This document shows, in pieces, positions 18,305-60,760 of a stretch of DNA of 64,000 nt (its first letter is position 1; each line of letters starts with the position of its first letter). The notes beneath the pieces are model-generated. The model ran no database searches. It worked only from the letters and a program-made list of their open reading frames with translations, and was not told where the DNA came from. The stretch is from contig NC_087257.1 in the NCBI RefSeq assembly GCF_037042905.1, positions 7,688,001 through 7,752,000 on the forward strand, written 5' to 3'. The stretch comes from Lytechinus pictus. Lineage: Eukaryota. Position numbers and translations under genes: made by a program.

Positions 18305-18720
18305 AGAAGTTTTTGTCTAAATTGGTGAACCGGAACAGCAGTTTTGTCCTGGTTTCAGGGCTAATGAAAAGATTGATCGCGTGACCAGAATCAAGGACCA
18401 AATTTCTGCTTTGATTCACCACTTTTCGACAAAGTCTTCTCTGTAGGCTTTGTCATTGCGGGCATTTGACAAACTCTGTTCTCGAATCCTCCTTACATCG
18501 CTGAGCTAAAACCACCTTTTTATCTGACACAGACGGTGTTGCTGTCTCGCCTTTTTAAATACAGACATCAATCCACCTCCATCATGCCCACGGACGCCAT
18601 TAAGACTGCTTCGATGGCCAGCAGTGAGTGCAACAGATCCTCAATGAGCCTTCACACTGAACGACGGAAAGAATACGATATCAATTCATGAGCTCGTTTT
18701 CTGGCAGATGCGGATCCTCT
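18305..18720 (+). pseudogene. pogo-like transposase fossil with hairpin copy A
   Basis: Hairpin 18312-18433; QTVLLS (~QITVLAC); frameshifted GYINSELF.W at ~18677-18705. Confidence 0.6.
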
Positions 18721-18814
18721 TATACGAGAGAATTCGTCACATTCGACAATCGATCGATTTTGTTATAGAGGTATTAGAGTTTGAATAGGATAACGAGTGA
18801 ATTAAAAGAGGTTT

Positions 18815-18819
18815 AAGAA

Positions 18820-18850
<31 letters not shown>

Positions 18851-19060
18851 AGGTGCAGCGAGGGAGGGTGAAGATGAGGGAGGCACAAAATAATGAAGAG
18901 CTAGAGATCATGGATATAGCGAGGTAAAGAGAGAAAACGGAGAGAGATACAAAGGAAAAGAGATATAGAGATACAGGAATGGGAGAGGGGAAAAGAGAAA
19001 TTGAAAATAGAGAAATACTGAGAGGGAGAGAAAGGGGGAACTAAAGAGAAAAAAAATTAT
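18815..19060. repeat. (GA)n purine-rich tract
   Basis: Visible; similar tracts at 19330-19480, 22320-22590 and 29095-29220 (pyrimidine strand). Confidence 0.85.
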
Positions 19061-19109
19061 TGAGTAATTCCTGAAATGTGGATCCCTGGAGAAATGATCG
19101 AAATCAGAC

Positions 19110-19290
19110 AGGATTTGTCAAAGGACTCAAATTCAGAAAAAAAAGCGCCTGGGCTGTCAAGATTCTGCCTGCCCTAGGTTTCATTTTAGTCACGATTTTT
19201 CGTTCATCCTGTCTTACAATTTTTCATTCTGTTTCTCTGTTTCACGCGATGAATATGAGCCTCAAATCGAGTGGCTCCAGGGGCGATTCC
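19110..19290 (+). pseudogene. pogo-like transposase fossil
   Basis: SAWAVKILPALGFIL (~SAxGxxLPPxxIF). Confidence 0.45.
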
Positions 19291-20289
19291 TGATCTTTTA
19301 CTTTCGTCTATTAGTTGAACTAGATCTCTCGGGAGAGAGGGGAGGGGTGGGTGGGTGAGAACAAATAAGAAATGAGACTAGAGAGAGAGAGACGTAACTA
19401 GGCAGCATGAGATGCATGGGAAAGGGGAGAGTATATGAGAGGGGGTGGAGAGAACGAGGAATAACAGATAATAGAGAGGCACGATATCAATTTTAGAATT
19501 TATCTGCAATTTTGTAATTACAACTTTAAATTAATTTTTCAACCACTGTCAAGCAGTCAAAAAGTTACATTGATTAAAATAGTAAAACATCAGGAAATAC
19601 ATCGTATGGTACATGCTATTTAGATGCCAATGGAAGCCAAGCGACATATTGTACTAACGCTTTGCAAAATTTACTTCAAAAACCCTTTGCCGTTTTTGTT
19701 TTCATTTCAAATCATTCACAACTAAAATAGACGTTCTTTGTTATTTGTGCACAGAGTGAGATATGACAGACGTTTCATTCCTAACATTATAAATAGAGTT
19801 TTGACAGAAGTTAAATGAGGGGATGATATTGATTTTAAAGAACATAAAGTAAAATGACGTAACTTTGTAGAGGTAGGGATCAAAACAAAAATGGCCATCC
19901 ATCTTTCTGATGTTGAATCCAGAAAATCGTACGACCGCGAATGCAATGTCTTAGTGTTCTTTTTAATTTTAATTCTCTTAAAACTCTGTCTCTTCAAAAT
20001 CCCCTTTGCTTGCCAAAGAGAAAGTGGTTCGAGAGTTGAGACCGACCACTTCAGAGGGCCAACCGACCAGTTATTTTGTGGCATAGGTTGTACCAGTATA
20101 GTGTTTTGCCCTACCCAAACCCATGGGAATAACTAATGTGTGCGTATTCGGGTGTTAAACTGCTAAAGGTGTCAACAACAGTAACATTCTTAGCAGTGTG
20201 ATAAAATGCGTCGGGAAGATTTGCTCTCTGAAATGATAATGAAATAAATAAATAAAAACAACAGCAACAGAAAGAGATATCTTTATGAT

Positions 20290-20900
20290 AAGTGGTTGAT
20301 CAAATCGATGTGGAAATTGTTTCCTGGACCAATTCAAATCGAAGGTGTAAGGCTATCTTTGTCCTAAATGTATCCTTTAATACATCGCTTAGGCTGATCG
20401 AGGCATTGGCACGATCAGACTTCTGATAAATTGTTAAACAGTCGCCGCACGGCTCTGAGACCTTTAAAAATTGAACCCGCAATCTAAGAGGGCATCCCGA
20501 CTATAGGGTATCATGACATCACTCTTTTCACTCCGTCCCCCAGAGGATTCGGCTGAAAACACAATGACCAGCTAAATCAAAGGGTAAAGCAAACATTTTC
20601 GATCATATTTAAGACGTCAACGGCACTATGAGATCACAGACACGGTATGCCCTCAATCTATGGGCAAATCCAGGACGGCCGAATCAAGCCGGGCGAGGTG
20701 TATCTCACATGTACGAGATTATTGGACAAAAATTGAATTCCCCAATCATCTCGCACAGCATCTAGACCTATTTCCTTTTACCCGATAATATTTCTTACTG
20801 CATGGTTTTCATGACAACTATTTATGGAAAGCACTTTAGTAGCATTGGCATGATTGAAGTATCGGCCATTCGCAGTGGGATAACGAATCCAAATGGCTTC
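20290..20900 (+). pseudogene. Two adjacent pogo-like transposase fossils
   Basis: SPHGSE at 20442 (~PPHxSH); AESSRARCISHVRDYWTKIEFPNHLAQHLDLFP from 20678 (~SxxRAxCxxxVxxYFxKLxxxL...P). Confidence 0.6.
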
Positions 20901-21299
20901 AGAGAATAGGCTATGGTCGATAATTATTTCGAAGCTGAATAGAAGTGTTTTCAAATAGGCATTCTTCGGTCATCGGGGTGCAACTACTGCGAGGGTGTAA
21001 CGAAGTGGGTGTATAATGGGGGTGCGGGAGGGTAAGTGTTCTTGTGGGAATACATTTATCTCGGGGAAAGATGATAAATACATAATAAGAAGGTATAGAA
21101 TGGATGCGATGCTTAATCACTTGTAAGACGAGACACCTGCGTTCCAAAGAGCTGGCATTTAGGACTCACCAACCGTGATTGTTCGCATGCCAATACCCAG
21201 TGGTCCTTCCACCCTTTTTTCATTATTGTTATTACACAATAGAAACGAAATGTACAGAAGAAGAAAATTCGGAAGAAATGGATTGTATTCAGGCCATGT

Positions 21300-22260
21300 C
21301 AATAATACTTAATATGTAGTTTTCGCACCGGGACGCAGACCGAATTGAATAATAGAGTAAAATGCATTGAAACGTTCGTCAAATGGTAATGACCAGCTTG
21401 TTCGTCTTTGTCGAGATATGGTGAACGGGGAACAGCAGTTCCATTGTAAGTTTCGGAACTTACGAAAAAAAAATCAAATTTGTCGTTTGTCCAGAGTCCA
21501 GGAGGAACTGCTGTTTGTAAGGAACCAATTTTCGACAAAGACTTCTTGGTTGCTCTTTGTCATGAAGGGTATTTGGCAAATCCATTTTCTATGTTCTTGA
21601 AAGCGTTCTGCGTTGCGATGCAAGAACTCCTCACTATTGCAATGATAAGGGCTTCCGTAGTTTTTGCTGAGCTTCAGTCATACATCCGCTCCGAATATTT
21701 CGATCCAATCTAAAGAAGATATGGACGTTGTGGTATGTCCTTTTCCCCCATTCATCGATTCAAGATGATCAAGACATCTTTGGATATTTCATACACTGTA
21801 AAAGCAGAGATTAAAAATTTACCCAGTATTATGTAGAAAGGTATGTTTGCAGGGTAATTTTTTCCTCAATATTGTGAAAAATGCATGTTTGAAGGGTAAA
21901 TTTCAACGAAATATTGCGTAAAAGTAACAAAATATTTGATATCTTTTTACCCAACAAACATGCATGTTTACATTTACCCAATATTGGGTAAACCTTTTTA
22001 GAGTGTAACAAACAAGAAACATCCCAATTCGATGAAACAAATCTGCTGCTCAAATCTGTGTTCCTTTCCTTGCGTATGGATATGTGGGGGATATAAGACG
22101 ACTTTATCTTCGCCTAATCGCCCGAGCAGGATGACCGATGTCATCGATTAGACACGGTAAGATTAGCCGTAGCTTGGGGAGATGGGCACTCGCCAATGGG
22201 TTTTCGTTTCTTCCCTAATGCCCCACCTCTCGAGTCAAGGTGGTAGGGTTACCGGGGAGA
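21300..22260 (+). pseudogene. pogo-like transposase fossil with hairpin copy B, split by a MITE
   Basis: Hairpin 21404-21542; FDK..HEGYLANPFSMF; FPPFI (~21741); GDGHS at ~22178. Confidence 0.62.
21794..22005. mobile_element. CAC-terminated MITE with TA flanks (CMC/CACTA-like)
   Basis: ta|cactgtaaaa...tttttagagtg|ta; internal tttaccc/gggtaaa motifs; relatives at 27151-27252 and 63704+. Confidence 0.75.
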
Positions 22261-23502
22261 AACGGGCATCGAGCGATCAGGAAAAGTGTCATGACGCAAT
22301 CCTTTGAAGAGGATGCTAGAGGGGGGAAAGGATGCATAGACTGAAGAGAAAAGGGAAAGAAATGGGAGTGAGATTAGCAAGCGGGTGCGTGTATGTGTAT
22401 GAGAGAGAAAGAGGGAGAGAGAGGGTGAGAGAGGGGACAGATAGAAGAGAGAGGGGGAGAGAAAGGGGATAAGGAGAGAGGGGGAGAGAGGAAGAGAGAG
22501 AAAGCGAAAGGGATAGACAGAGTGAGTGTTAGAGATCGAGAGAGGTGTGCGGGATGGATCTAAAATCTAAAGAGAGCAGAAGAGACCTAGTGGGTGTGTG
22601 TCTAGAGTGTAATTATGTCTTTATACACAAGTGGATAAGTCCCAGTGTGAACATGGACCTACTAGTAGGTTTATGGTGAGGGTAACGTTGATTGAGTAGA
22701 GTGTGTGTGTGTGTTTAGAGGGTGAGCGTTTAAAGGCATGTGCGCGTGGGTGGATGTTTATGTATTGTTGAGAAGCACAAGGCCATGTACACCCACACAC
22801 ACGCAAAAATAAAAACAAAAAACAAAACAGATGGCTGGGGAGGGGAGAGAAGGGGGGGGGGTGTCAAACAGGCTACGTTGCACAGATAAACACAATGTTT
22901 CTTTTAAAAACATACCCAAAAATATATTTACAAATTTTGAATGATATCCCATGGCCGACGCTTGGAATATTACCTGTAAATAAGTAGGTATACTGAATAT
23001 TTCAGCACGACACCCCCACACACACACTAAATCTAAAAAGATAGGTATAATCAATAATCTATACATGCTTTACTATTTAATTAATTTTTACTAGCTATTT
23101 AGCATTGAAACATTGGGTAAATTTTAATGAAGATGATCCCTGCGTTAACACCTTCACAATACATAATTTCTCAATGTACTCGTGGCGAATTGCTATATCC
23201 CTTTCCTTGCAAAGATTTATATCCCTTCGCCCACAGAAAGGAAGCGACGAATCTAGGACATCAAGAGTGCCGAATGGCGTCTCTTATTGACTCAGTTAAA
23301 ACAAACTTGAACCATTAATCTCTACCTCTGAGAGAACACGCATATCTGAAGGGGTTCGGTGTTAATATCAGTACGTTCACTCCTCTCAAAACACGAGGTA
23401 TTCCGAAAGAAAAATGTGTTCACACAAAGTATACATCAAGGTATACATCCTCTGTTCTTAATCTGTTCTATGTGTGCGGCCGAATCTGCACAAGATGATA
23501 TG

Positions 23503-23685
23503 CAGTGGCGAATCCTGGTGGGGGCGTATGGGACAGACACCTCCCTATATTGTTGCCAGTTGAATAATATATTTAGATATTATATCATATTTACAAATAT
23601 AACAAAACTGTCTCCTGTGCCATTCTGCTTAAAAATTGCTATCTGCCCCCTACCCCTCTGTGTGAGATTTAAGGATCCGCCACTG
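23503..23685. mobile_element. CAG-terminated MITE with 5-bp TSD
   Basis: TIR cagtggcgaatcct / aggatccgccactg; TSD atatg. Confidence 0.8.
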
Positions 23686-23876
23686 ATATGGGCTCGTAAA
23701 TTATGTGAAGAAGTTGTTTTGATAGAAACAGACCCTCTTATCAAGAGGGGTTAAAGACAAGGAAACCACTTCAAGTTCATGTTATGAGTGCTGTCAGTAC
23801 AGCTTATTCAATTAACTCCCACATACAGTCAAAGCAGACTATAAAATGAAATTAGATAAGCATCTAGTTAAACAAT

Positions 23877-24054
23877 CAGGGGGCCGTTTCATAAAACTGT
23901 TTGTAACTTAAGAGAGACCTTACGAACGACTGGTGATCCTTTCTTACGCGCTAAATAATCACCAATAAACATTTAAGTGTATACCATTTACCACAAGAAA
24001 GGATCACCAGTTGCTCTTAACTTACGAACAGCTTTTTAATGAAACACACACCAG
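23877..24054. mobile_element. Harbinger/PIF-like palindromic MITE
   Basis: cag|ggggccgtttcataaa...ttaatgaaacacacac|cag; internal IR actggtgatcctttctt / aagaaaggatcaccagt. Confidence 0.75.
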
Positions 24055-26279
24055 ATGTAATTATCATTCTCGAATTTCCCTCGTGTTTTATACACAGTGA
24101 ATACGGCAGCGATTCGATTCCCAATTCTTTACAGCAGCATGCAAACATAACTGCAAACATTTGATTTTAATCGATAATTTTGATTAGTCTTTAATTGTCA
24201 TTTCAAAGCACCTCATTTTGTTGAACAATGCACTGTGTCCATTGGCGCGTGTATGTGTGTGGGAGGGGGGGGGGGTGCATCACCCAAATTGATGGGGTAT
24301 AATGTGTACAAGGTTTCATGGTGGAAAGAATAAAACAAATAGTAATGATATTATCTTACCGTGTCATAACGGAATCCATATTCATAGGGTTACTTAGGAT
24401 TTTTCAGATTGAACAAATGAATGAATGTACATGTAAGTTAAGAGACTGGGATTTTACGTCGTACCCTAAGAAAAAAAAGTGGAAACGTCGTTGAATGTGT
24501 GCGTGGGCCTCCATGAAAGTGTTTGAATTGAGAGGGTTGGAGCGGAAAGGGGGTGCTCAAGTATCGGGTGGGCGGGATGATGATGGAGGGAGTTTCATGG
24601 TCAGATCTTTGCCATTGTTTGCTGATCATCTATACCGCAGTCAGACACTGAACAGATGAAACGATAAGAAACCGAATGGCAATGGAAATGGGCTCTCGAA
24701 TATACATGTAGGTATAACCAACATACCAACATAAGACCCTGATTCTTAAATTCTAAGCCAGTCATGCGAGTAGATTGGGCAAAGCACCCACTTAGTCACA
24801 GCCAGGACTAGGTATGCAGAGCTTACTAAATAACGATTCTGGTCTTAAATGATATTTATCGATGTCTGGTAGATGTGGCCGTGGAGAGGATTCTGTCTGA
24901 AGGGCAAAATGAAATAAACCCTACTGGAAGAAAAATGAAGTTCATCATGTTTATTGTGATCAAAATAAAGATTCCTTTGTGAAAGCTGGTCAAATACGGG
25001 TAATTACCAGTGTCAGCGTGTTTTATTCCTCTTTGTTAATTTGTTTGAATTCTAAATTAATTACCCCCCAAAAAAAAATCAAGCTCAAACAATGCTGAGG
25101 AAAACATTGATATACGGCGTCCAAAGTGATCTCGATGGCAAAGCGCTTTAACACATTTAAAATTCCTTCGCTTCAGTCCCATCTTCTTCTCTTCTCAGCT
25201 TCCATTACATTTCATTTTCCTATTCCTTCATTATTGTTTTGACGTTGTGATTAAATGCTCTTGGAGCATTTTTCCGCTCTATTAATTATCTTTATTGAAT
25301 CATCATCAGCACGGGGTGCCTCCCAAGGAGCCGTCTATCTCTTCTTTTCAACTACCCTGTGGGTATAAACGGTATTATATAAACTAGACAAGTCTCTATA
25401 GACAGATAGATCATGTCAAAATGAAGCTCGGGGAGGGAATGTAACAGCTTTTCGAAATAGGAAATCAAGTTATGAATTTTCAGTTGAGCTCTTGTAAAGA
25501 TGATTTGCAGTACCGGTGATGTGTTTTGTGATGTGTGGGCACAACCAAAATGATTGTGTTGAGAAATAATATTTAAGATATAAATAGTTGAAAAAAGGAT
25601 TTTGTTACCTTTAGCATGTTTAGCGTTAAGTCAAACAAGTACCTAGATGATGCATCAAAATTCATTTTATCTGACCAATCTATTATGATACATATAACTG
25701 TATCAATGAAGTGAAGGGTTATGTATCAGGCCTGCAATTGCCATTTCTTACTTGTTGCTGTCGTTTTCATCGTCGTCGCCATCATCGAAATCATCTTCAT
25801 TCCAATCATCATAATCTATCATTCTTCACCTTAATGAGCCGGGTCCAGGATTGAAAAAAAAAAGAGAAAAGGACCCCTTTTGCCAAATAAAAAAGATATC
25901 GGCGAGACAAGCCGGAGGAGCGGGGGGGGGGGGGGGGAGGGGGGGGGAGAGGTTTCCCCACCACCTGAATTCGTGCCTGTGATGGTGTGGAATGGGGCCT
26001 TTAGTTCTTGTATCGATACCCATAAGAATCTTAGAAGAGTAGTTTCTCGGATTATAATGTAAAGTCTTCTAATAACATTGAATTTTACGAGGTTGTAAAA
26101 ATTACAAGTTTTACCTCACCCATGCGCTCACACTTATCATGTATATATATATATATTCATATTTTCCTTTTGACTTGAAATGACCAATATCACAAAGGTA
26201 ATTGCAAACAAAAAATATATCAGTATGATAAAATAGATTTCTTTGGTGTATAATTCAGTTTTTTAACTATCTAATGAAG

Positions 26280-26930
26280 ATATGAAGTGACGTCTTGTGC
26301 TGTTTTATAGACGTCTTCAATTGCGTTTTTTAACATCCACTTCGCAGACGCTTTTTGGAACGTTGATAATCTATTAAAATTGCCACACAGTCGATTCACA
26401 ATGGACAGATCAGAGGTCATTGTCGAAAGTTGGTTGACCGGTCCAGCAAATCGTCTTGAAATTCGGACCTGTCGAAAAATTGCAAATATGTCCTTGTCCA
26501 GGGTCCAAAACGACACTGCTGTTTTGATTCACCAATTTTCGACAAATACTACCATATTATGAAGGGCTTTTGATAAAATGATTATCAGCGTTATGGAAAG
26601 CGTCTGTGAAGTGACTGCTAAAATGCCCTATTAATAACTCTACACAAACAAACAAACTGCGTACTTTATTTGTTTTATTTAGGCCAACCATGCAATTTAA
26701 TTTTAGACTAAAATGAGAGGAAAATATATTAATAGCTTAACATGCACGTTCATATTCATAAATTCATAAATCTCTTTTTTTCTTTAATCGAAATTCATGC
26801 GCGACTCGGCCTGGTTTTCAGACTCGGATCATCTGTCTCTCCCGTCGACGTCCCAACAGTTGTTGCCCCGGGGAGCACTCACTCTCCGTCTATCATCTTC
26901 ATCATTTTGGAAATCTCAATAATGGATTGG
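26280..26930 (+). pseudogene. pogo-like transposase fossil with hairpin copy C
   Basis: Hairpin 26420-26545; RKIANMSLSRVQ (~RKPExLSxxRA); LPSTSQQLLPREHSL at ~26838 (~LPxHTSHxLQPLDxSVF). Confidence 0.65.
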
Positions 26931-26999
26931 TGAGAAGTAGTTCTCTTCATTACCAACAATGCCCATTGAAACAAATTCTAAAATAGAGTACTAGATTTG

Positions 27000-27095
27000 G
27001 AATATCACATTCATAGATTCACCCAGAGGATGCGCGTACTTTACGTTAGCGGACAGTAGCCTTTGGGAGCCACGGGACTTCCCCAATCTTTGAAT
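27000..27095 (-). pseudogene. pogo-like fossil fragment
   Basis: SRGSQRL...GESMNVI (~RGxKxV...GExVTVI). Confidence 0.4.
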
Positions 27096-27150
27096 TGAGA
27101 CGTAAAGTGGTGAAATAATAGGTAAGGAAGGCGCAGACGCCGCATACATA

Positions 27151-27252
27151 CACTCTAAAAAGTATTGGGTAAAAAAATACTGACCCAAATTGGTTGGACA
27201 CATAATACCCTCGTGGTGGTAACAATTTTACCCAATATATTTTTTTTCAGTG
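27151..27252. mobile_element. Small CAC-terminated MITE
   Basis: ta|cactctaaaaagtattgggtaaaa...ttttacccaata...ttcagtg|ta. Confidence 0.75.
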
Positions 27253-27777
27253 TATATAAATTGTTAATGAAAAAAAAGTCCGACGGAGTATGGTGTGGCA
27301 AAGGGAAAAGGGAGACTCTGTGATCTTGTCTCTGTTATAGGAATCATTAATACACCAATGATGCACTTTAAGTAAAAGTTAAAAACTTTCGGTGTGTTTA
27401 GCAATACAGAAGTGGCATGCAGCATTTCATTTTTTTTTACAGATGTAATTATGCACCTTTATGGGCAGAAATGTGGAAATATGAATATCTTAACCTTTAA
27501 AATGCACTCCCTGTTACTCACATCTACTTCAATTCTTTCAATACTTTTGGGGAATTATGCAATATTTATAATGATGCCTTTGAAAAACTGCATTTATAGC
27601 CTCAGTAAATGGTCAATACTGTAAATTATACTCAACTATGATCCAATAGTCCAATCTTTTAAACTTGTATCAGCGGTTTTTTTCAACTGCCAATTCTCCT
27701 TTGAAAACAAAAATATTCAAATTAAACATATATAGCCTTATCTCACTTGTTAAACAAAATTATGGATTGGATATCAT

Positions 27778-34305: not shown

Positions 34306-35440
34306 AGCCCATTTTACATCTCCAAGGATGCAACACGGATCATAACGGATCTCAGTCCGTGGTGATCCGGGGTGCCAAATTGATATTTTTCTACCATTGC
34401 CGGAGTGAATACACATTCGACTGGGTATATTCACACGGAAATGTACAGAAAATGCGATTTCTACAAGGATAGACAAGGCAGCAGTAGGGATCTACTTTAT
34501 AAGCTACTGGGAGTCAACACGGAATACACGGATGTTACTGGGTCCTTACACGGACGTCCACGGTGGCTTACGGTCTCTACTGTGCTAACTAAAGATATCT
34601 AATGTGGTATGGCCAAGATTGACATTTCTTTCCTTTTTGCAACGTCTGAAGCGTACCCATACGGTTACACTTCGTAATTCCGAAGGTTCTTTATTCCGAA
34701 GGTTCGTAATTCCGAAACACGTAAATTACCTATACCTCGATGTTCGTTAATCCGAAAACGTAAAAGGGTTCGTTAATCCGAACATTTGTGGTGTTATTCC
34801 GAAGGTTCGATAATCCGAAAACGAAATAAGGTTCGTTGTTCCGAAGGTTCGATAATCCGTATACGAAATAAGGTTCGTTGTTCCGAAGGTTCATTAATTC
34901 GAAAACGAAATAAGGTTCGTTGTTCCGAAGGTTCGTTAGTCCGAAAACGAAATAAGGTTCGTTAATCATTTCGTTCTCGGACTAACGAACCTTCGGAATT
35001 ACGAACCTCATTTCGTTTTCGGACTAACGAACCTTCGGAAATACGAACCTTCGGAATAACGAACCTTCGGAATTACGAATGTATGCGACCCATACATGAC
35101 CATGAACACGGACTATTATTCATGTACGCAAACAATGGCATAATTTCGGCCTCGGATATAGCCGGTATTAACAAGTACCTCCCGGAGCCTCCGGATGCAT
35201 CCAGTAGCTACACGGATGTACAATGTGGCTACAAGGATGAACACTGATGAATATCCATCCGTGTACTCCGGGATGAAATATTGAACATGTTCAATTTTTC
35301 TCCTGGATATGCCGGTACATCAAGGATGGCACCGGATAAGTGGCCGGTATGTACACGGTAATCGCGGACTGTACACGGTTCATCCCGGATTGACAATCCG
35401 TGAGGATCCGTGTTGCATCCGTGAAGGTATAAAAGGGGCT
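34306..35440. mobile_element. Harbinger/PIF-like non-autonomous element
   Basis: TIR agcccattttacat..ggatgcaacacggatc / gatccgtgttgcatcc..tataaaaggggct; flanks taa/gaa; many cacgg/ccgg subterminal motifs. Confidence 0.8.
34663..35087 (+). mobile_element. Foldback element built of ttccgaaggttcg units (Merlin/MULE-like), nested
   Basis: Perfect 8-bp TSD acccatac; ggttacacttcgtaattccgaagg...ccttcggaattacgaatgtatgcg. Confidence 0.9.
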
Positions 35441-40735: not shown

Positions 40736-42099
40736 AAGAGCTCACTTGCAAAAGGGGTTAGGTCCATTTTCCCGCATACATTCGTAATTCCGAAGCTTCG
40801 TTATTCCGAAGGTTCGGATATTCCGAAGGTTCGTTATTCCGAAGGTTCGTATTTCCGAAGGTTCGTAATTCCGAAGGTTCGTTAGTCCGAAAACGAAATG
40901 AGGTTCGTAATTCCGAAGGTTCGTTAGTCCGAAATCGAAGTGAGGTTCGTAATTCCGAAGGTTCGTTAATCCGAAAACGAAATGAGGTTCGTAATTCCGA
41001 AGGTTCGTTAGTCCGAAAACTAATGATTAACGAGCCTTATTTCGTTTTCGGACTAACGAACCTTCGGAACAACGAACCTTGTTTCGTTGTCGGATTAACG
41101 AACCTTCGGAACAACGAACCTTATTTCGTTTTCGGATTAACGAACCTTCGGAACATCGAACCTTATTTCGTTTTCGGATTATCGAACCTTCGGAATAACG
41201 CCACAAATGTTCGGATTAACGAACCCTTTTGCGTTTTCGGATTAACGAACATCGAGGTATAGGCAATTTACGTGTTTCGGAATTACGAACCTTCGGAATT
41301 ACGAAGTGTAACCCATTTTTCATCAAATTTTTATTTTTATGTCTCAATGTATAGATTTTTAGTAGCTCTATAAGATGATACCAAAAAAAGTTGAAATTCC
41401 TATTAAAAAGTGAACTGAAATGGCAAAGAAAAATCACCTTTTTTCAAAAAGGGGTTAGGTCCATTTCAGTTTAGTTACAAAAGGGGTTAGGTCCACACTT
41501 AATTTTTTTGGAAAATAATATCTTAAAATATATGAAGACAGGTAGATTTCTTTTATACCCAATTTTATGTTCTCATGATAGGGTATCATGAAAATTTAGT
41601 TTCGCATAAGAATATTGCGATATGGGAGAATAAAAAAAATGATTTTCTTGGAGTGGACCTAACCCCTTTTGCAACAAAACTCTTCTAAAGAACTTATTTG
41701 TCAAAAGGGGTTATGTCCATTTTTCATAAATTTTATTGTTTTCTTTCTATAAACCTCAAAATTTTTAGTCACTTTGATGATATCAAAGAAAATTTGAAAT
41801 TCAAATAAAAACGTGAATGAAAGTGGCAAAGAAAAATCACCTTTTTAATCAAAGGAGATTAAATTCATTTCAGTTTACTTGCAAAAGGGGTTGGGTTTAC
41901 AATGATATTTCTTTTTAATATATAGAAAAAGTTGAAGACAGGTAGATTTCTTTTCTACCGAATTATATGTTCAAATGATAGGGTAGTACATCATGACAAT
42001 TTAGTTTCTCATAAGAATATTACAATAAGTGAGTATAAAAACATGTTTTTCTCGGAATGGTCCAAAGTGGACCTAACCCCTTTTGCAACTAAACTCTTC
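40736..42099 (+). mobile_element. Non-autonomous DNA transposon with aaaggggttaggtcca repeats
   Basis: TIR gaagagctcacttgcaaaaggggttaggtcca / tggacctaaccccttttgcaactaaactcttc; AT-rich flanks. Confidence 0.88.
40773..41313 (-). mobile_element. ttccgaaggttcg foldback element nested in the TIR of the previous element
   Basis: TSD cattttcc/catttttc; reverse complement of 34663-35087. Confidence 0.9.
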
Positions 42100-43842: not shown

Positions 43843-43854
43843 AAGCGAGGCCAA

Positions 43855-44165
43855 GCAGAAGAAGAAGCAGGAGAAAAAGAAGAATAAGAAGCAGCAGAAG
43901 AACAAAAATAAAAAGAAGAAGGTAGAAGAGGGAGACAGAAGAAGAAGGTAGAAGAAAAACAAAAAGAAGAAGACGGTAGAAGAAGAAGAAGAAAATGATG
44001 AAGAAGNNNNNNNNNNNNNNNNNNNNNNNNNNNNNNNNNNNNNNNNNNNNNNNNNNNNNNNNNNNNNNNNNNNNNNNNNNNNNNNNNNNNNNNNNNNNNN
44101 NNNNNNNNNNNNNNNNNNNNNNNNNNNNNNNNNNNNNNNNNNNNNNNNNNNNNNNNNNNNGAAGG
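43855..44165. repeat. (GAA)n tract with assembly gap 44007-44160
   Basis: Visible. Confidence 0.9.
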
Positions 44166-49596: not shown

Positions 49597-50070
49597 GGTT
49601 ACACTTCGTAATTCCGAAGGTTCGTAATTCCGAAACACGTAAATTGCCTATACCTCGATGTTCGTTAATCCGAAAACGTAAAAGGGTTCGTTAATCCGAA
49701 CATTTGTGGCGTTATTCCGAAGGTTCGTTATTCCGAAGGTTCGATAATCCGAAAACGAAATAAGGTTCGATATTCCGAAGGTTCGTTAGTCCGAAAACGA
49801 AATAAGGTTCGTTGTTCCGAAGGTTTGTTAGTCCGAAAACGAAATAAAGTTCGTTAATCATTACGTTTTCGGACTAACGAACCTTCGGAATTACGAACCT
49901 CATTTCGTTTTCGGATTAACGAACCTTAGGAATTACGAACCTTACTTTGTTTTCGGGCTAACGAACCTTCGGAATTACGAACCTTCGGAAATACGAACCT
50001 TCGGAATAACGAACCTTTGGAATATCCGAACCTTCGGAATAACAAAGCTTCAGAATTACGAATGTATGCC
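49597..50070 (+). mobile_element. Third ttccgaaggttcg foldback element
   Basis: Same termini as 34663-35087; flanks gatttctc/tctttctc. Confidence 0.9.
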
Positions 50071-51739: not shown

Positions 51740-52067
51740 AGGAAACCAAAACCCAAGAACAGAAGCAATGTTATTGGAATTATCTTTAAATCAAATTGCA
51801 CATTACCTCATTCTGAGCATAACATATGTCATGGGAAGAGATGATGTGAAATATGTAAATTAAAAGGGGAAATCTGGAAATTTGTGTACAAAACAAATCA
51901 GCCATTTTGAAGCATGTTTGCCAATCTGAGGATCCCCATAGAAAGTACAAGACTTTTTAAACGTCCATAACTTGCTTATTTTACAACCGATTTTGATGAA
52001 ACTTGTTTTAAATTGTTCCTATTAATTTACTCTTTCCAATAAAATTGCTTCTTTTATTTGGTTTCCT
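51740..52067. mobile_element. Kolobok-like MITE
   Basis: ttaa|aggaaaccaaa...tttggtttcct|ttaa. Confidence 0.8.
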
Positions 52068-53069
52068 TTAATAGTTTGCTGATGTATGCATGAGGGGGGG
52101 GGGTAATTAATCACTCTACTACCCAGTACATTCTTGAAACAAAGAATATTCCATGTGAGCGTTTCATCAACATTGATGTGTCCGACAAGTTGTCAGATCT
52201 GACATTTTTCCTAGATTTTGTAAAAATAGTAAACATGAATCCTAAGAATACGCACAAAATACTGTAACGTTTGCAAAAAACATAAATGGACACTACAATA
52301 TTATAACGTGATTGGTCAGTAGACATGGTGGAGATATGGCACTTGTTCTTCCCTTATCTCTCCTCGCCTATAGACGTCGACCGAACATGCCATCATTCAC
52401 TTTGTAAGCTGTGTTTAAATAAAACAGAGACGTATATTACGTCTTACCCAACATGCCAAAAACAGCACTGAACAGCCCACACATTCTAAAAATGAACATA
52501 TCAACGATTTTCCTATCGCGGTGCTAATAATGAATAAAGTAGCGCCGACAAAAAGAAATCCATATCAAATTATTTGCTGAGTCGCAGGATAGTCAAAGCA
52601 GGATAAAGCGATCAGAAAATATTCTTGAAAACAAAGTATCAAGTGCTTGCATTCTCAATTGGTCAAATTGTAATCCAAATAGCACATCGGATTATGCTTT
52701 GTAATCCTCACTATTTTAGTGTGGTTGAATGGTCATAGCGCTGTCTATCCATTTTACGCCAATGCATAAAAACTTTGGTTTCATTTTTATAGGTGTCTTT
52801 TATTGCAAAGGATTTTGATTTAAATGTCTCATGAAAATGCATAAGGCCTATACTTAATCAGAATTCATTGCAATAATCATAAATGACTAACAATAATAAT
52901 AATGATGATATTTGTAATAATAATTCTAATACTTATAATAATAATAGTAATAATGATAAAAAATTGTAGTAGTAATAATAGTAGTAGTAGTAGTAGCAAT
53001 AGTAGTAGTAGTAATAATAATAATAAGAAGCAGAAGAAGAACAAAATAATAATAATAAATCCTGTTTTA

Positions 53070-53395
53070 TAATGTAAAGCACTTAATACATCGAAACGAC
53101 ATCATTAAGCGCTTTACAGATATGTTATTACACTGGTCATCCGATCTTGGCTTGCCCGCACACAATGTATGCACTTTCTCCCCTCCCTGGGGAGCATTCA
53201 AACAAGAGTTCCAACACCCGAATGCTAGTCATACAACATACACTTTCGCATCCTACCGGGTAACAATTTAAACCTGAGTGGAGAGTGGCCCGGAGAGAGT
53301 GGCAAAGTGTGGTTTGACGCCATGCCAAATGACGCTAAACTGTGGTAAGATTGGAACGCATGAACGCATAAGTCGGAACCTCTACACCACAACGC
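53070..53395 (-). mobile_element. tRNA-derived SINE (family of 17979) followed by an (AAT/TAG)n tract at 52870-53060
   Basis: Reverse complement colinear with 17979-18250. Confidence 0.85.
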
Positions 53396-53699
53396 TTCTT
53401 GGATTATGCCAAAATATTACATCCTCGGTAGAGGAAAAAAAGAAGGTTGATAAAGTTTTCAGCTTAATCTTAACCCTATAACATGCCTAAACAGCACAAC
53501 ATGTTATACAAGCCCTTTAAATGTATGAATATTTCTTTATCTTCCAGCGTTTCAGATGCGACGGATGGCTGGTTAGACCTAAATGTTAAATGTAAGCCTA
53601 AATACCTTAAGCATTTCTAAATTTGTGTAATTCATAGAGTATATTACATGACATCAATAATCCTTTTTTTCATATATGAAGCCACTCTCTACAATCGGA

Positions 53700-53950
53700 T
53701 GAACAACAAACCCTTTCTCAATATAGACGTGAGTAAATACGAGCAATGGGGAATCGGGATACTTCATCTTTCTCAGAAAGTACTGAAGAAAAATCCACCA
53801 ACACATCAAACAATGTTCTCATTGCTTACCCTCCATGTCGTCTTTGCGGATTCTATCCCGCAAGCAAGGGGGAACTAATCAAGCAACGAAGCGGAGGAGG
53901 TAAATATCTATCCCACAGAATGTCAGAATACATCGCAAATACTCCTTATT
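53700..53950 (+). pseudogene. pogo-like transposase fossil
   Basis: NNVLIAYPPCRLCGFYPASKG (~NNIxLxCLPPHxxHxLQPLDKG). Confidence 0.45.
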
Positions 53951-54406
53951 AACTTCGGATAGAGGGACACTATGACGAAGGGTGAAACCAAAATCAACAA
54001 AATAAGCAAGAAATGCAACCCTGCTAGCCCAGATTCCCAATGCAATCCTACCCTCAATCAATGCTTTGAGAACCGGATCGGGTTTACCTGATGCAGCGGC
54101 ATCTGTATACCTCAAGATTGATGGTTTTAGTAGACGGGATATGATATTATTCTCAGATCAATACATGATAATTTATCCGGGTGTTATTGTTTTAATATCG
54201 CGAACCAGCGGGGCTGAACATAACCTAAGTCCCTTTTTAACGACATACCGCTGCTCGTCGGGGGAAATTTGAGAAGATAATACACGTGTTGAATATCAAA
54301 CAGTTTTAAAGTTGCTTAAACAATCAGGTTATTTATAATCACTGTTTGGCGATTTTTCAAACACACGCACCAAAATAGAAATAATATGTTAACAATTCGA
54401 ATACAG

Positions 54407-54649
54407 CACTGCCAAAACACTGGTGTTGAATTAACAACAGCCCGGTATCTGTATCGGTCCACACCAGAAAATCGTATAAACAACATCAGTTAAGAATCAA
54501 ACCGATATATTCGTTTAGCACTAATTAGTGTTGCTTAAATGCCAATTTGGTGTAAGCATAACGCCAAAATTGGTGTTGTTTCAACACCTCTCTGGTGTGG
54601 ATTGATATATAGAAGCTGGTGTTAGATTAATACCGGCGTTTTTGCATTG
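54407..54649. mobile_element. CACTG-type palindromic MITE
   Basis: cactgccaaaacactggtgtt / ataccggcgtttttgcattg; internal ccacaccaga / tctggtgtgg. Confidence 0.7.
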
Positions 54650-54659
54650 TTTAAATAAG

Positions 54660-54980
54660 CGATCAGGAAAGCTGCCACAACAGGGACGGATTTTGCTACA
54701 TAAATCTATTGTCAACATCCTTCATGATAAAGCAGCCTTTATCGAATAAAAACTGCAGTTTTACCCTTGACTATAGCTAGACAAACGACACGTTTGTAAG
54801 AATCGTCATTTCAGAATCTTACGACGATCAGCTGTCCCGGTTCACCAATTTGCTACAAAAGCCTCCCAAGCTGTCCATTGGGATTTTACGGACATCTTCA
54901 ATAGATTTATTTCGTTGTAGATTCCGTCCCCGTTCCAATTGCGAAAACTGGCTACTAATTATCTCATGAGACCACATCTA
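54660..54980 (-). pseudogene. pogo-like transposase fossil with hairpin copy D (one arm partly deleted)
   Basis: Reverse complement aligns to 26340-26600 and 60340-60600; NGQLGR / GFCSKLVNR. Confidence 0.6.
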
Positions 54981-55851
54981 TATTTTTAACGAACTGCGAG
55001 AATCCCATAAAATTCCAAACAAAGCCAGCTAAAGATGCAACCTAATCATTAGTTATCAATAATATCATGATAACCGATATACTATATTTCTAGAAAAAAA
55101 AGGTATTCGATAATGTAGACAATAGTGAGTGTCTGGGAGTGGTCCGGGCATTTGAAGATTAAATCTTCTCTCATAATTCTTAATATTTTTCTTTTTTAAT
55201 TTACATGAATCAATAATTTTCTGTGATACAATCATCAAGGAATGGTGAATAATTTGTTTTATACTAGGTTGTACTTCATTTCAATTTTTAAAATTAAAAT
55301 GGAAGTATGTATTATATATGTATATAAATGTACGAGAAAACAAAGTTCCTTGGATAAAAAAATACTAAATTAATCATATTATAAATATATATATATAATA
55401 TCGAAACAACATGTTTATGATTTAAAATTTAATCATGTTTTTTTTTAAAGAATTGTCAATGTCTTATTTACGATCATTGTAAAGTTCAAACTAAGTTCTG
55501 TAATTACGGTGTAATTATATTGAACACGTTTTGAATTCTTGATAAAGAATGTAATGGTTAACTATATTCTATTATTTTATGAAAGAAGAGAATAAAAATA
55601 AAAAATCATTTAAAGAAGATTAAAAAAATACTGTTAGAATAATTTGAATCCTGATATCAAGTTGCGTAATTTTGAAATACCACCTGGCATAATTAATCGA
55701 TAGCATTTTGTCTTAAATTATGTTATCGAAACATCAAACGATCACTATGACTGATTCATCTCAATCAATCACTCCTTATGAGTGAATGTATAAGTTGAAT
55801 GAATAAATAAAACAAAATTAAGTAAAGAGAACATAATATCATCTTCGTAAC

Positions 55852-57048
55852 CAGTGGCGTAACTACGGGGGGGGGGGGGGGCATGGGGGGCACGTGCCCC
55901 CCCCCCCCGATCGGCTGACCAAAAAACAAAAAAAAACGGGGAAAAGGAGAAAAAGAGGGAGAAAGGAAGAGGAACGTAGTGGCAAAGAAGAAATTATTAT
56001 TCATTATAATTGTATATTGTATTATAATCATGTTATGTTATATTATATAGGAAACATTTTTATCATAACTTTATGAAACATAATTTGCTCAGGGTCCATG
56101 TCTTCATTGTTCCTGGTGCTCGCATTGTCTGTTTAAAAAGATATAAACCTGTTGTTCGAAAACCTCCCGTTCTGAAGTCAATTTATATACACTAAATATA
56201 TTATTGTTTTATGTAGTGACATATGCTTCTTTTTCATGACTACTTAAAGTGATTGCCCCATGTTAAGGTCTTAATATAAAACATTTCCTGTCCGTGATTA
56301 CGATCGCTTCAGTGGATTGGTGAGATATGTCTGCTCTCCATGAATTCCTAAAATCAGTCCTTGAAATGTCCCCTTTTCTGATCTGAATATCTTCAATATT
56401 TTCAGCTCGCGCTTCGCGCTCGCATCATTTGGTTAGTGAAATACGTATGGTCTTAGTGAATTCCTACAAACAAGCCTTAGACTGCCCCGCTTAAGGTCTG
56501 AATTATCTAAATTTTCAGCTTGCGCTTCGCGCTCGCAATATTTGATTAGTGAGATGCGTATGATAATCATGATAACATTGACTACAAAAAGTGCTTCATG
56601 TGTTCAGATGTAATTCTAACAAAATCAGTAAGCGCTTGGCACTCGCATTACATGACTATGGTGAGATATGTATACTATTAAGAGATTCCTAAAATATAGT
56701 CCTTAAGATCTCCCTGTTTGGGATCAATATATACAAAAATTTCGGCTCGCGCTTCGCGCTCGCATTGTTTAGCAAGACAGGTACGTATCATGATTACAAA
56801 AATTCGATTATAAAGTCCTTTTTTAGGTCTGAATATAAAACATTTTCAGCTCGCGCTTCGCGCTCGCATTATTTGATTGCTGAGATGCGTATGTTATTCA
56901 TGATTACAATGACTACAAGTGCTTCCTTAAAATGTCTCTATTAGGTCAGTATACCTGACAACTTAGCGCGCTTCGCGCGATCACTTTATAAGTGACTCAA
57001 AAATTTTGCTGGTGCCCCCCCAATGCCGTGACCCATGGTACGCCACTG
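55852..57048 (+). mobile_element. hAT-like non-autonomous element with internal ~115-bp tandem units
   Basis: Perfect 8-bp TSD ttcgtaac; TIR cagtggcgta / tacgccactg. Confidence 0.92.
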
Positions 57049-57079
57049 TTCGTAACATAAATACTGAAAAACAGCCATT

Positions 57080-57340
57080 AGTTTACCGTGCAAAAGTTTG
57101 TGATGGAAATGTGACATTCTCGAAGGCAGTTCCTCTGTTAAGGTTGTCAAGCATGCGTGCTTGATACCCTTCCCACTCTTTCTGAATGGCTTCGGGCAAT
57201 GAATTAGTACATTCGAAAACAATGAAGAAGTTTATAGAGCAATGAGCATGATGAGAGTAAAGGTCGACATGGGAGTTTGCGCGGAGGAAACCTTCGCCTT
57301 TTTGCGATACTTTTATGAATAATGCAAACCTTGATCCCGC
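57080..57340 (-). pseudogene. pogo-like transposase fossil
   Basis: FLRANSHVDL (~LDxHxSHVxL), then IVFEC..EAIQ. Confidence 0.4.
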
Positions 57341-57389
57341 CAAGATCTTAACTTAAGATATCGTTTCTCTAAATAATCTTCATCGTATT

Positions 57390-57680
57390 CCCATAATCCA
57401 AACCCATCTTAAGATGATCAAAAGAAATGCTGCAAGGCTGAAACCACGCTCTACAGCGATGCTATGCAGCTCAACGGATATCAATAAAAACTTTATAAAG
57501 AAAACAATAATACCAGAAAGACATGTAAGGTGACTCGACATCCAATACTCAATGACGTATCCGGTGAAGTCAACGATTTCATTTATTCTACTCCTATGCA
57601 TAATTTTCCTCCCGCCTGGAAGTCCTGTAAGTATCAATGTCGTTGTATCCATTACCGGTCCTTATCGGTGCTGTCTTGTC
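57390..57680 (+). pseudogene. pogo-like transposase fossil (second and third D)
   Basis: Single frame CSSTDINKNFIKKTIIP..*LD..MTYPVK..IIFLPPGSPVSINVVVSITGPYR (~WSNEETM..YIxKII.P, LD, FxPxG..LDVSINxPFK). Confidence 0.62.
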
Positions 57681-57697
57681 GGGTAAGGAGGGAGTAG

Positions 57698-57876
57698 CAG
57701 GGGCCGCGGAACGGTTTTCAAAGTGGGGGGGGGGGGGGCTGAGCCAAAAGTGGGGGGCTGACCATGCTAAAAATCACAATCATATGGTCATTTTTACATT
57801 TTTGTACACGGTTTTGGAAAAAAAAGTGGGGGGGGGGGGGCTGAAGCCCCCAGCCCTCCCGGTTCCGCGGCCCCTG
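57698..57876 (+). mobile_element. CAG-terminated G-tract MITE with 5-bp TSD
   Basis: TIR caggggccgcggaac / gttccgcggcccctg; TSD agtag. Confidence 0.88.
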
Positions 57877-57919
57877 AGTAGTAATGAGAGGGAGGGGGGG
57901 GGGGGGTAAGGGGAGGTCC

Positions 57920-58500
57920 TTTCCTATGTTCTAGTAATTTTTCGAACGCACAACCCCATCTTTTCACTTTTGTTGGTATGTTTGAAGACACCGTCCACAT
58001 TTCACTAATGGCGCCATCCGTCCAATCTGAAAAGTCCTGGGGCCGGTAACTCAAAGCTGAACAAATCATCTTAAAATGTGTTTTTACGATTGGTTGCAAT
58101 GATTATAATGTACGATTTATCTTGAAAATCAAGTGTACGGTTAATTGCTAACATTTGTGTTACAGGACCCTGGAATCGCCACGGGCCTCCATCACCAGTG
58201 CAATTACGAATGCAAAGAGACATTTCCCTCCAGTTTTCTTCTCGATATTTGCAATCATCTTAAGCACCAGAACGTTATCTAACCAAAAGAGGAATGGTGT
58301 TTGGTTCCCTGCTCTCCACATGAAAATAAATATAAAAAGAAATGTCGGCAATCGACTTGTAAATTGTTTGATCTTTGAATAAGCCATTACCATGAATTTC
58401 AAATGTTGAGGATCCAGTCATTTTAACATTTTGATTATCAAAGTCGGCTCTCATTAAAAGGGAATGCACTCCATCAATCCGCTTGGAATAATATGAAAAA
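57920..58500 (+). pseudogene. pogo-like transposase fossil (HTH to DDE)
   Basis: RPHFTNGAIRPI*, VNC*, SITSAITNAKRHFPPVFF in the expected order. Confidence 0.62.
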
Positions 58501-58879
58501 GGCACTGATAAGAAAGTTTAATCGTTCAATATTGTGTTTCCCAATTTTTTACACTCTATTTGACATGTTGGATAACCATTTTCTATGTATAATCACACTA
58601 TTTATGTATGTATGCCCCCACATCCAGTGTACATCTCATTAAAGTCATTACAAACAAACGTGACGAACGATAACTACCCCCTTTTGTAAACTTCCCAACA
58701 CACACATGAAATCGAAGGATTTCGATTGATGTGGTAATCAAAGAAACTGTACAAAAACACGTAACATAAGTTGTTGGGGATAAAGTAAAATAAATCAGTA
58801 AATATGTTCCAAACTATAAAAAGCGAAGGGAAAAGATGATTACCTCAGCATTTTTAATGTTTCTAATCACAGGAGAATC

Positions 58880-59070
58880 TCCATCAAAGTGCCTTCCAGA
58901 AAAAAAACTTCCAAAAGTCCAAAAGATATCGAACTGCAAATTCGCAGAAACGGTGTCCCTCAAATTTTCAGTTCTCACACCATCAACAGCCAACACAGAC
59001 AATAGACAAAAAAGCTATCTCCCAAATGCCAACGGATAGGGATCGTTCGTTTTCTAATGGGTGTGTTCTC
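58880..59070 (+). pseudogene. pogo-like fossil fragment
   Basis: KSPKDI...PNANG*..FVF. Confidence 0.35.
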
Positions 59071-60339
59071 ATGGTCGTGTGACCGGCCACCCTTAAGTGA
59101 CTGAAAGCATATCTTATGGATTATTCCTACTTATCACATGGTAAGACGATGTCACTTGAAAGTTTTCGTCAACGATACGTGAAACAATATTTAAGATCAG
59201 CAATGTAATCGGTGCTTATTCTATACTTTTAATTAAGTTCACGTTTTTATTTTTGTAAAGCACATCCTTGAGTAACCTTCACTTTTATCATATCAATAAT
59301 CCACGAAGTGGGTATTTAAATTTTCATATTCCATTTAACGTCAGACATTTTTTTCACAGTTGTTTTTACCTTAGCATGTGCTATTTGAACGCCCTGGAGC
59401 AGACTCAAAGATAACATGTTTTATCGAGTGTAAAATAACGCTCATGTCACTGGTGTACTATGCTAGCAAGTTTACATCACATAGATCATGAAGATCAAAC
59501 ACGATACAAGTGTCTCATCTAACATTGTTCGTCGATTAAATTATTTAATTTTCCGAGAAATACATAGGTCAATCGAATAATAGAGGTGTTTTTAGATCAA
59601 AATGCATGTTAGATTGTATAAAGACGTTGAACATAGCCTACGGCAAACGTGGCAAAGTTACAAACAATATCTTGGCGTTCTTGACTGAAGCAAAGTTATT
59701 GCACATACGGTTCCTCTTCATGTCGTATTTCCATCCCACAATGGTACCTCTCAGTGTGCCGTTGTAAAGAAAGAAGCCTGCGGCAAATATCCTCTCTTTA
59801 GCGAGAAAACATAATCATATTGGGATTTATCGAGCATAAAGTCAGTTCATTAATGGCCAGAGTTCTTTGCACTTTGTCGTTGCCAATGACTGTATTACAC
59901 TAAATCCTCACTATACCCAAGTGTCTGAACGATTTACACTTTTATCACATCTCGACCAACGAGACTTTACCGAAAGACAAGGATAAAAATAAAATCCTCA
60001 CAGGGGCGATGGGAGTTTTGCTCATTACGTACAGGCGCAAATTCAGGTGTACGGATGGGGAAGGGGGTGACAGGTACCCCTTCGATCCACACTGCACATA
60101 AACTTACCCTGTGCCCCCCCCTTAGGAGTGACTATGAAAATACTTTCCGATATTGGACTGATTAACGCTTGTCTGCTCTTTTCTTTAGATAGAAAAGAAA
60201 ACTTCATTGCCTTTGAGAAACAAAAATGCTTCTTTATAGTCTCCGAAAGTTTTACTTGTAGTGCTTTGAAATGAAGTTAATTGTTGAAGTGGTAGGCCTA
60301 CAAGCATGCCCCTGTGAACACGTTATTAGCCTATTTTCG

Positions 60340-60760
60340 CCACTACGCAGACGCTTTCTACAACGCACCAATTCCTTTGAAAATGCAAATCACAATGTAT
60401 AGACATGATAGATGAGAGGTTTTTGTCGAAAGTTGGTGAACAGGGACAGCAGACCGTCGGAAGATTCCGACGGGACGAACAATTGGAAATATGTAGTTTT
60501 TCAGAGTCCAGGACGACACTGCGGTTTTGATTGATCGATTTTCGACAAAGGATTTATTCGACAAAATATTGCCTGCATTATGGAAAGAGTCGGCGTGATG
60601 ATTGCGAAAATACGATTTCTTTTAATGGCTGCAAACCTGTGTTCACCGCCCGATCACCGGACTATTTAGTGTCGAGTGAGATGAGGACGGAACACCTTTT
60701 ACTATTCGCTGATGAACATTTCCCCACTTGTGGCAGTTACTGAACTGCATACTTTAAAGA
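60340..60760 (+). pseudogene. pogo-like transposase fossil with hairpin copy E
   Basis: Hairpin 60422-60549; RGFCRKLVNR, frameshifted W.KESGV, LLLFADEHFP. Confidence 0.62.

What the first reader, a model, noticed from the sequence alone, without database searches (positions are those of the whole stretch)
18312..60549. Five-copy dispersed hairpin family with strand-specific G.U pairs and copy-specific compensating stems
Seen: copies at 18312-18433 (+), 21404-21542 (+), 26420-26545 (+), 54735-54863 (-) and 60422-60549 (+). Consensus arms are TTTGTCGAAAGTTGGTGAACxGGGACAGCAG and CTGCTGTTTTGATTCACCAATTTTCGACAAA. Most arm mismatches are G opposite T, so they pair as G.U only on one strand. The inner stem differs in sequence between copies yet still pairs: A ttttgtcctggtttc/gaatcaaggaccaaa; B aacagcagttcc/ggaactgctgtt; C tcgtcttg/caaaacga; E cgtc/gacg. 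B and E also carry different small hairpins at about the same position (gtaagtttcggaacttac 21446-21463; ccgtcggaagattccgacgg 60454-60473). The arms look better conserved than the flanks. The segment lies inside what reads as the HTH-to-DDE linker of a pogo-like transposase ORF, not at a TIR, and the four + copies share the same 4-T run (QFSTK rather than the expected QFFDK). Inference: an ancient transposon-derived structured RNA or ssDNA element, possibly exapted. Alternative: quasi-palindrome correction by template switching.
Basis: partly seen in the sequence, partly recalled or inferred. Interest (0 to 1): 0.8.

Follow-up and report, generated by a model that had tools for sequence, protein, structure and literature searches.

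The report
Decayed copies of an ordinary MITE
The five "hairpins" are five worn copies of a common 300-base palindromic mobile DNA element, a MITE present in thousands of copies in this genome, and nothing shows that the host uses their fold.

Summary
The five copies exist and are homologous. They are not a five-member hairpin family.

**What they are.** Each is part of a roughly 302-bp non-coding element:
- It has 43-bp terminal inverted repeats and is flanked by TA.
- Homology stops sharply at its ends.
- Its left half and reverse-complemented right half are 82% identical over their whole length.

**Abundance.** The genome holds thousands of copies. The arm 13-mer ATTTTCGACAAAG occurs 2390 times, against 36 for the control. 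There are at least two age classes.

On 40 independent copies:
- There is no covariation: 86.7% of cells pair, against 86.5% in shuffles, and both-sided changes number 12 against 12.5 expected.
- New mismatches show no strand bias (G.T on + 123, on - 133).
- Copy-specific substitutions are no rarer in the arms (3.3% against 3.4%).
- No transposase domain, Rfam family or locus-specific RNA was found.

**Verdict.** This is an ordinary MITE, probably of Tc1/mariner/pogo type, decaying neutrally. I did not find its autonomous partner.

**Other notes.** The scan holds similar unverified hairpin notes on other pieces of this genome (s1-324953, s1-329334). I could not tell whether they are this family. 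The gap at 44007-44160 touches no copy.

The parts
60327..60617 (+). Copy E: near full-length MITE of the younger subfamily, 89% identical to the consensus. TA at 60327-60328. Left TIR about 60329-60366, inner arms about 60421-60451 and 60521-60551, right TIR about 60575-60615 (3' tip diverged).
   Evidence: nhmmer E=4.6e-55; coordinate map; alignment to 29 genomic copies.
26321..26630 (+). Copy C: full-length MITE, 81% identical to the consensus. Flanking dinucleotides are TT (26321-26322, a mutated TA) and TA (26629-26630). TIRs 26323-26363 and 26588-26628. Inner arms about 26418-26448 and 26518-26548.
   Evidence: nhmmer E=1.4e-51.
21313..21636 (+). Copy B: older-subfamily MITE, 75% identical to the consensus. 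TA at 21313-21314 and 21635-21636. Inner arms about 21406-21437 and 21510-21541. Local hairpin at 21446-21463.
   Evidence: nhmmer E=4.5e-25; fold z -7.4.
54664..54954 (-). Copy D: older-subfamily MITE on the minus strand, 74% identical to the consensus. The right inner arm is partly deleted, and the inner segment no longer folds better than shuffles.
   Evidence: nhmmer E=6.4e-32; alignment; fold z -0.49.
18302..18476 (+). Copy A: partial older copy covering consensus positions 85-258. Both TIRs are missing or unrecognisable.
   Evidence: nhmmer E=2.5e-16.
44007..44160 (.). Assembly gap. It is not part of any copy. An (AAG)n microsatellite at 43853-44006 lies beside it.

Best explanation
The five hairpins are five independent, decayed insertions of one high-copy MITE (miniature inverted-repeat transposable element).

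**The element**
- It is about 302 bp long, flanked by TA, and has 43-bp terminal inverted repeats.
- It has no coding capacity.
- Its body is palindromic from the tips to the apex, so either strand can fold back on itself.

**How it works (inferred)**
- Copies were moved in trans by a cut-and-paste DDE transposase of the Tc1/mariner/pogo superfamily. The transposase recognises the terminal repeats and possibly the inner repeats, and it duplicates a TA target.
- There were at least two bursts. The older class is about 22-25% diverged from its consensus and the younger about 9-10%.
- After insertion, copies drift neutrally.
- The hairpin is a by-product of the palindromic origin of the element, most simply one transposon end folded back. 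It is not a host function.
For: **Shown**
- Homology among the five copies extends about 300 bp.
- Thirty genomic copies align with sharp ends. The consensus starts TA-GCGTATTTTCGCAATCACTACGCAGACGC and ends with the reverse complement of nearly the same sequence, then TA.
- TA is present on the left in 11 of 15 copies, on the right in 13 of 15, and on both sides in 9 of 15. There is no longer duplication.
- The two halves are 82% identical in both subfamily consensuses. The consensus folds as one hairpin, at -154.6 kcal/mol on the + strand and -140.9 on the - strand.
- Copy number: 2323 to 3008 first-look candidates; 259 TIR matches with at most 3 mismatches; 2390 exact arm 13-mers against 36 control hits.
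- Two subfamilies are present.
- There is no covariation.
- Private substitution rates are equal in the arms and elsewhere.
- No Pfam transposase domain was found in the open stretches, and there is no Rfam match.

**Inferred**
- The superfamily, from the TA flanks.
- Mobilisation in trans.
Against:
- No empty site was found, so TA as a target duplication rather than terminal bases rests on convention.
- In the younger consensus, mismatches between the halves favour G.T on the + strand 12 to 4 (two-sided p about 0.08).
- Copy E carries a true C:G to G:C double change in the local hairpin.
- Variation shared among sub-lineages is lower in the arms (3.6% against 5.9%, p=6e-4). This hints at a cis requirement in source copies.
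- The sample is 40 copies, not the whole family.
Confidence: 0.9

Rival explanations
1. Exapted structured RNA or ssDNA element: the hairpin of one strand is used by the host and kept by selection.
For: - The consensus folds better on the + strand (-154.6 against -140.9 kcal/mol).
- Six of 7 arm mismatches in the younger consensus are G.T on the + strand.
- Copies B, D and E fold better on the element's sense strand.
Against: - There is no covariation: 86.7% paired against 86.5% in shuffles, and 12 both-sided cells against 12.5 expected. In my own test, compensated doubles number 18 against 14.4 expected, P=0.17.
- 522 single-sided changes sit against 26 double changes in the younger set.
- Private substitutions are as frequent in the arms as elsewhere.
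- Copy C prefers the opposite strand, and D no longer folds.
- RNAalifold finds no consensus structure, and there is no Rfam hit.
- RNA-seq reads over D and E come mostly from other copies and lie in both orientations.
Confidence: 0.03
2. Quasi-palindrome correction: intrastrand template switching during replication occasionally re-perfects local stems inside individual copies. This would give copy-specific "compensated" pairs without selection.
For: - Copy E has C:G changed to G:C in the local hairpin.
- Genome-wide counts for this 17-mer are: unchanged 24, right-side change only 1, left-side change only 0, both changed 1 (copy E itself).
- The only right-side-only copy lies 69 kb from E on the same chromosome. 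This fits a two-step path.
- B's local stem is 7/7 paired, against 5/7 (4 Watson-Crick plus 1 wobble) in its subfamily consensus.
Against: - This rests on one or two events. A simple independence test on the E pair gives p about 0.08.
- Family-wide, both-sided changes are not in excess.
- One of B's three changes is shared with other old copies, so it is a lineage variant.
Confidence: 0.07
3. Some transcribed copies act as precursors of small RNAs (miRNA- or siRNA-like), as known for palindromic MITEs such as human Made1 and mir-548.
For: - The element has long fold-back potential.
- Family sequence is present in RNA-seq in both orientations.
- There is precedent in PMC1784062.
Against: - No small-RNA data were examined.
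- There is no Rfam miRNA match.
- Reads over D and E are mostly partial matches from other copies.
- There is no conservation signal.
Confidence: 0.05

Closest known systems
Stowaway-like / Tc1-mariner-type MITEs (for example human Made1, a mariner-derived palindromic MITE; PMC1784062)
   Same: Short non-coding element with terminal inverted repeats, TA flanks, a high copy number, sharp homology ends, and a near-palindromic body that folds into a long hairpin.
   Different: - This one is longer: about 302 bp against about 80 bp for Made1.
- Its TIRs are 43 bp, and a second inner inverted repeat lies about 90 bp from each end.
- No autonomous partner or small RNA was shown here.
- I could not match it to a named Repbase or Dfam family, because no such library was available.
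Head-to-head (two-same-end) Tc1 foldback elements noted earlier in this genome (s1-306781)
   Same: The two halves are inverted copies of one another. Here they are 82% identical along the whole length.
   Different: Those elements are kilobase-sized and carry a transposase. This one is 300 bp and non-coding. No sequence relation was tested.
IR/DR-type Tc1 elements (Sleeping Beauty, Tc3), which have two transposase-binding sites in each long inverted repeat
   Same: Each half has an outer and an inner repeat.
   Different: In IR/DR elements the inner site repeats the outer one. Here the inner arm and the TIR share only a weak 13-base similarity. This is a resemblance from memory, not a membership.

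Membership tests
MITE | Short (under about 800 bp) and non-coding | tested here: met
   The consensus is 302 bp plus TA flanks. The longest open stretch is 82-84 codons with no start context and no transposase domain.
MITE | Terminal inverted repeats | tested here: met
   The first 43 bases and the reverse complement of the last 43 match at 40 of 43 positions in the consensus.
MITE | Target-site duplication flanking each copy | tested here: inconclusive
   TA is present on the left in 11/15 copies, on the right in 13/15, and on both sides in 9/15. There is no longer duplication. No empty site was found to prove duplication.
MITE | High copy number with sharp homology boundaries | tested here: met
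   2323 to 3008 first-look candidates; 2390 exact arm 13-mers against 36 control hits; flanks are unrelated beyond the TA.
Tc1/mariner/pogo-derived MITE | TA target duplication | tested here: met
   with the empty-site caveat above.
Tc1/mariner/pogo-derived MITE | An autonomous element with matching TIRs that encodes a DDE/D transposase | not tested
There are no orphan TIRs in the 358 kb held.
   Pfam at E up to 10 on the longest open stretches of B, C and E gave only chance hits (zf-RRPl_C4, BORCS7, ABHD16_N), all below their cut-offs.
Conserved structured RNA | Covariation that supports the pairs | tested here: not met
   The count of structure pairs on 40 copies gives a covariation score of 0.132 against 0.130 in shuffles (180 of 500 shuffles at least as high). 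RNAalifold predicts 0 pairs.
Conserved structured RNA | Match to a described RNA family | tested here: not met
   Rfam 15 at gathering thresholds over the whole window: 0 matches.
Conserved structured RNA | Strand-specific expression from the locus | tested here: inconclusive
   Three RNA-seq runs were laid on the stretch. About 90% of the reads fit only partly and run on into unlike sequence. Both orientations have equal depth, and loose ends at 60343 and 60378 show that the reads come from other copies.

The most novel reading that the evidence does not exclude
The source (master) copies of this MITE may be under selection for a fold-back of one particular strand.

**Hints**
- In the younger consensus, mismatches between the halves are G.T on the + strand 12 times and on the - strand 4 times.
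- The inner arms vary less among sub-lineages than the rest of the element.

**What it would mean**
Transposition, or its silencing, would pass through a single-stranded hairpin of a defined strand rather than only through protein binding to duplex TIRs.
Probability: 0.04. Interest if true: 0.5.

Novelty: new member of a known kind. Interest (0 to 1): 0.08.

Why it matters
It matters little beyond annotation.

- It removes a false lead. Dispersed hairpins with apparent G.U bias and "compensating" stems can be produced by a palindromic MITE alone, through inheritance from its source copy plus subfamily differences.
- It gives a practical way to tell source-level constraint from host-level constraint: compare substitutions private to one copy with those shared among copies.
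- The family should be masked as a repeat in this genome.

Tried and rejected
- **Rfam on the whole window:** no match.
- **RNAalifold on 40 copies:** no consensus structure.
- **Pfam on open stretches:** no transposase domain.
- **Fetching 20-kb stretches around 71 TIR matches:** the genome serves only 10-kb stretches, so the targeted copies were cut in half. The sample therefore stayed at 40 copies, and I could not look for an autonomous partner. I did not try to draw more sequence by other routes.
- **Orphan TIRs in the 358 kb held:** none.
- **Paralogous empty sites among the held sequence:** none.
- **Similarity between the inner arm and the outer TIR (IR/DR idea):** only weak.
- **RNA-seq laid on 54660-60659:** dominated by reads from other repeat copies, so it says nothing about D and E themselves.
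- **Literature search for a named sea-urchin MITE:** nothing specific.
- **Earlier notes of the scan, by place and by sequence:** nothing on this family.
- **3-bp (TWA, PIF/Harbinger) and longer target duplications:** rejected.
Full report
**1. Observation**

I read the five places and aligned them with 200-bp flanks. They are homologous, but over about 300 bp rather than the roughly 125 bp of the hairpin. About 100 bp upstream and 80 bp downstream of the arms also align.

The gap at 44007-44160 lies between copies C and D, more than 10 kb from either, beside an (AAG)n array. The 42-kb span of the finding is only the envelope of five separate insertions, so continuity across the gap is irrelevant.

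**2. What the unit is**

A search of the window's own genome with copy E gave 2323 first-look candidates. All 40 that were scored are 74-82% identical. Copy C gave 3008 candidates.

Thirty genomic copies aligned with their flanks show sharp ends. The element starts TA-GCGTATTTTCGCAATCACTACGCAGACGCTTTCTACAACGC. It ends with the reverse complement of nearly the same 43 bases, followed by TA. The sequence beyond that is unrelated between copies.

The consensus is 306 bp including the two TA. With it, nhmmer finds exactly the five copies in the window and sets their extents:

| Copy | Window position | Strand | State |
|---|---|---|---|
| E | 60327-60617 | + | near full length |
| C | 26321-26630 | + | full length |
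| B | 21313-21636 | + | near full length |
| D | 54664-54954 | - | right arm partly deleted |
| A | 18302-18476 | + | fragment without TIRs |

Of 15 copies with both ends intact, TA flanks the left in 11, the right in 13 and both in 9. No 3- to 8-bp duplication exists inside or outside the TA.

**3. The hairpin is the whole element**

The left half and the reverse-complemented right half are 82% identical over about 141 aligned positions, in both subfamily consensuses. The consensus folds as one long hairpin.

The "small hairpins" in B and E are the family's own local stem near the apex.

**4. Abundance and age**

- A 30-base TIR pattern with up to 3 mismatches occurs 259 times, against 0 for the control.
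- Twelve unselected copies turned up in about 290 kb of sequence fetched for other reasons.
- I put the family at roughly 10^4 copies, with wide error.
- Copies fall into a younger set about 9-10% from its consensus (E belongs here) and an older set about 22-25% from its own consensus (A, B and D; C is intermediate). The two consensuses differ at diagnostic positions.

**5.

*Covariation.* On 40 independent copies with the consensus fold, 86.7% of cells pair, against 86.5% in shuffles. Cells changed on both sides number 12 against 12.5. The covariation score is 0.132 against 0.130. RNAalifold predicts no consensus pairs.

My own test per subfamily gives, for the younger set, 18 compensated doubles against 14.4 expected (P=0.17) beside 522 single-sided changes. 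The older set shows a small excess (27 against 20, P=0.03). I attribute this to unequal copy ages and unresolved sub-lineages.

In the older consensus it is 6 against 4. It is therefore one inherited state of the source copy. New single changes give G.T on + 123 and on - 133 in the younger set, and 78 against 60 in the older set.

Folding energies of the five copies on the sense and antisense strands disagree with one another. B, D and E favour sense, C favours antisense, and A is equal on both. D is no better than shuffles.

*Conservation.* Raw divergence is lower in the arms. I then split substitutions into those private to one copy, which arose after insertion, and those shared by several copies, which are lineage differences.

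| Substitution class | Set | Arms | Rest of element | p |
|---|---|---|---|---|
| Private | younger | 3.3% | 3.4% | 0.93 |
| Private | older | 6.7% | 8.2% | 0.26 |
| Shared | younger | 3.6% | 5.9% | 6e-4 |

Only the shared substitutions are rarer in the arms. So inserted copies are not protected. If anything is constrained, it is the source copies, as expected for cis-acting transposition sequences.

*ORF.* The open stretches are at most 84 codons and carry no HTH or DDE domain.

*Known RNAs and expression.* There is no Rfam match. Three RNA-seq runs laid on 54660-60659 give reads over D and E in both orientations. About 90% of them run on into unlike sequence, and loose ends at 60343 and 60378 bracket a 35-base stretch identical to the consensus. 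They therefore come from other copies.

**6. The one oddity**

Copy E has C:G changed to G:C in the local hairpin. Genome-wide counts for the 17-mer are:
- unchanged: 24
- right-side change only: 1, at G000:C13:7679423, 69 kb from E
- left-side change only: 0
- both changed: 1, which is E itself

This fits a two-step path by chance or by template switching. It is a single event (p about 0.08), and the family-wide counts show no excess.

**7. Mechanism**

*Shown:* a non-coding, TIR-bounded, TA-flanked, palindromic, high-copy element in at least two age classes, decaying without constraint.

*Inferred:* mobilisation in trans by a Tc1/mariner/pogo-type transposase, and origin by fold-back of one transposon end. 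Kilobase-sized head-to-head Tc1 elements were noted earlier in this genome (s1-306781, not tested here).

I could not seek the autonomous partner.

**8. Comparison and verdict**

The closest known kind is a Stowaway-like or mariner-type palindromic MITE such as human Made1 (PMC1784062). The element meets the MITE criteria I could test. The TA duplication lacks empty-site proof, and the family name and partner are unknown.

This is an ordinary repeat. The apparent RNA-like features come from a palindromic source copy plus subfamily differences. Interest is low.

Noticed in passing
window 34793-35079, 40781-41200, 49720-50062: Arrays of a 42-bp unit (with a 16-bp sub-unit, TTCGTTATTCCGAAGG-like) are each followed directly by the same array in inverted orientation. 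They look like arms of a foldback-type transposon. The scan has a note on a TU-like foldback with tandem-repeat arms elsewhere in this genome (s1-320086).
   Followed up: no
window 8370-9623 (-): Intronless 417-codon ORF with a rhodopsin-family 7TM receptor domain (7tm_1, E=3.6e-42).
   Followed up: partly
window 55860-57059 and 57660-57859: Very high-copy repeat. The summed contig depth in a DNA run is 10^5 or more, and RNA-seq reads lie on it in both orientations with many internal joints. It is unrelated to the MITE.
   Followed up: no
G000:C13:7679423-7679439 (8.6 kb before the window start): This is the only other copy in the genome with the right-side G-to-C change of the local hairpin 17-mer that copy E carries together with its compensating left-side change. 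I could not read it.
   Followed up: partly
genome-wide, e.g. G000:C1:7517227/7517344 and C1:11183716/11183834: Many copies carry the exact 13-mer ATTTTCGACAAAG on both arms, a minus-strand hit followed by a plus-strand hit 110-140 bp on. This indicates a sub-lineage with perfectly matching inner arms, like the older consensus.
   Followed up: no
window 630-808 and 5383-5558: Two further N runs, each next to an (AGT)n microsatellite (522-629, 1319-1877, 5305-5373).
   Followed up: no
window 18302-26630: Three MITE copies (A, B, C) lie in the same orientation within 8.3 kb, and there are five in 64 kb. This is about ten times the genome-average density of exact 13-mer hits (2 in the window against 0.19 expected). 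It is probably ascertainment of this window, or regional clustering of the family.
   Followed up: partly
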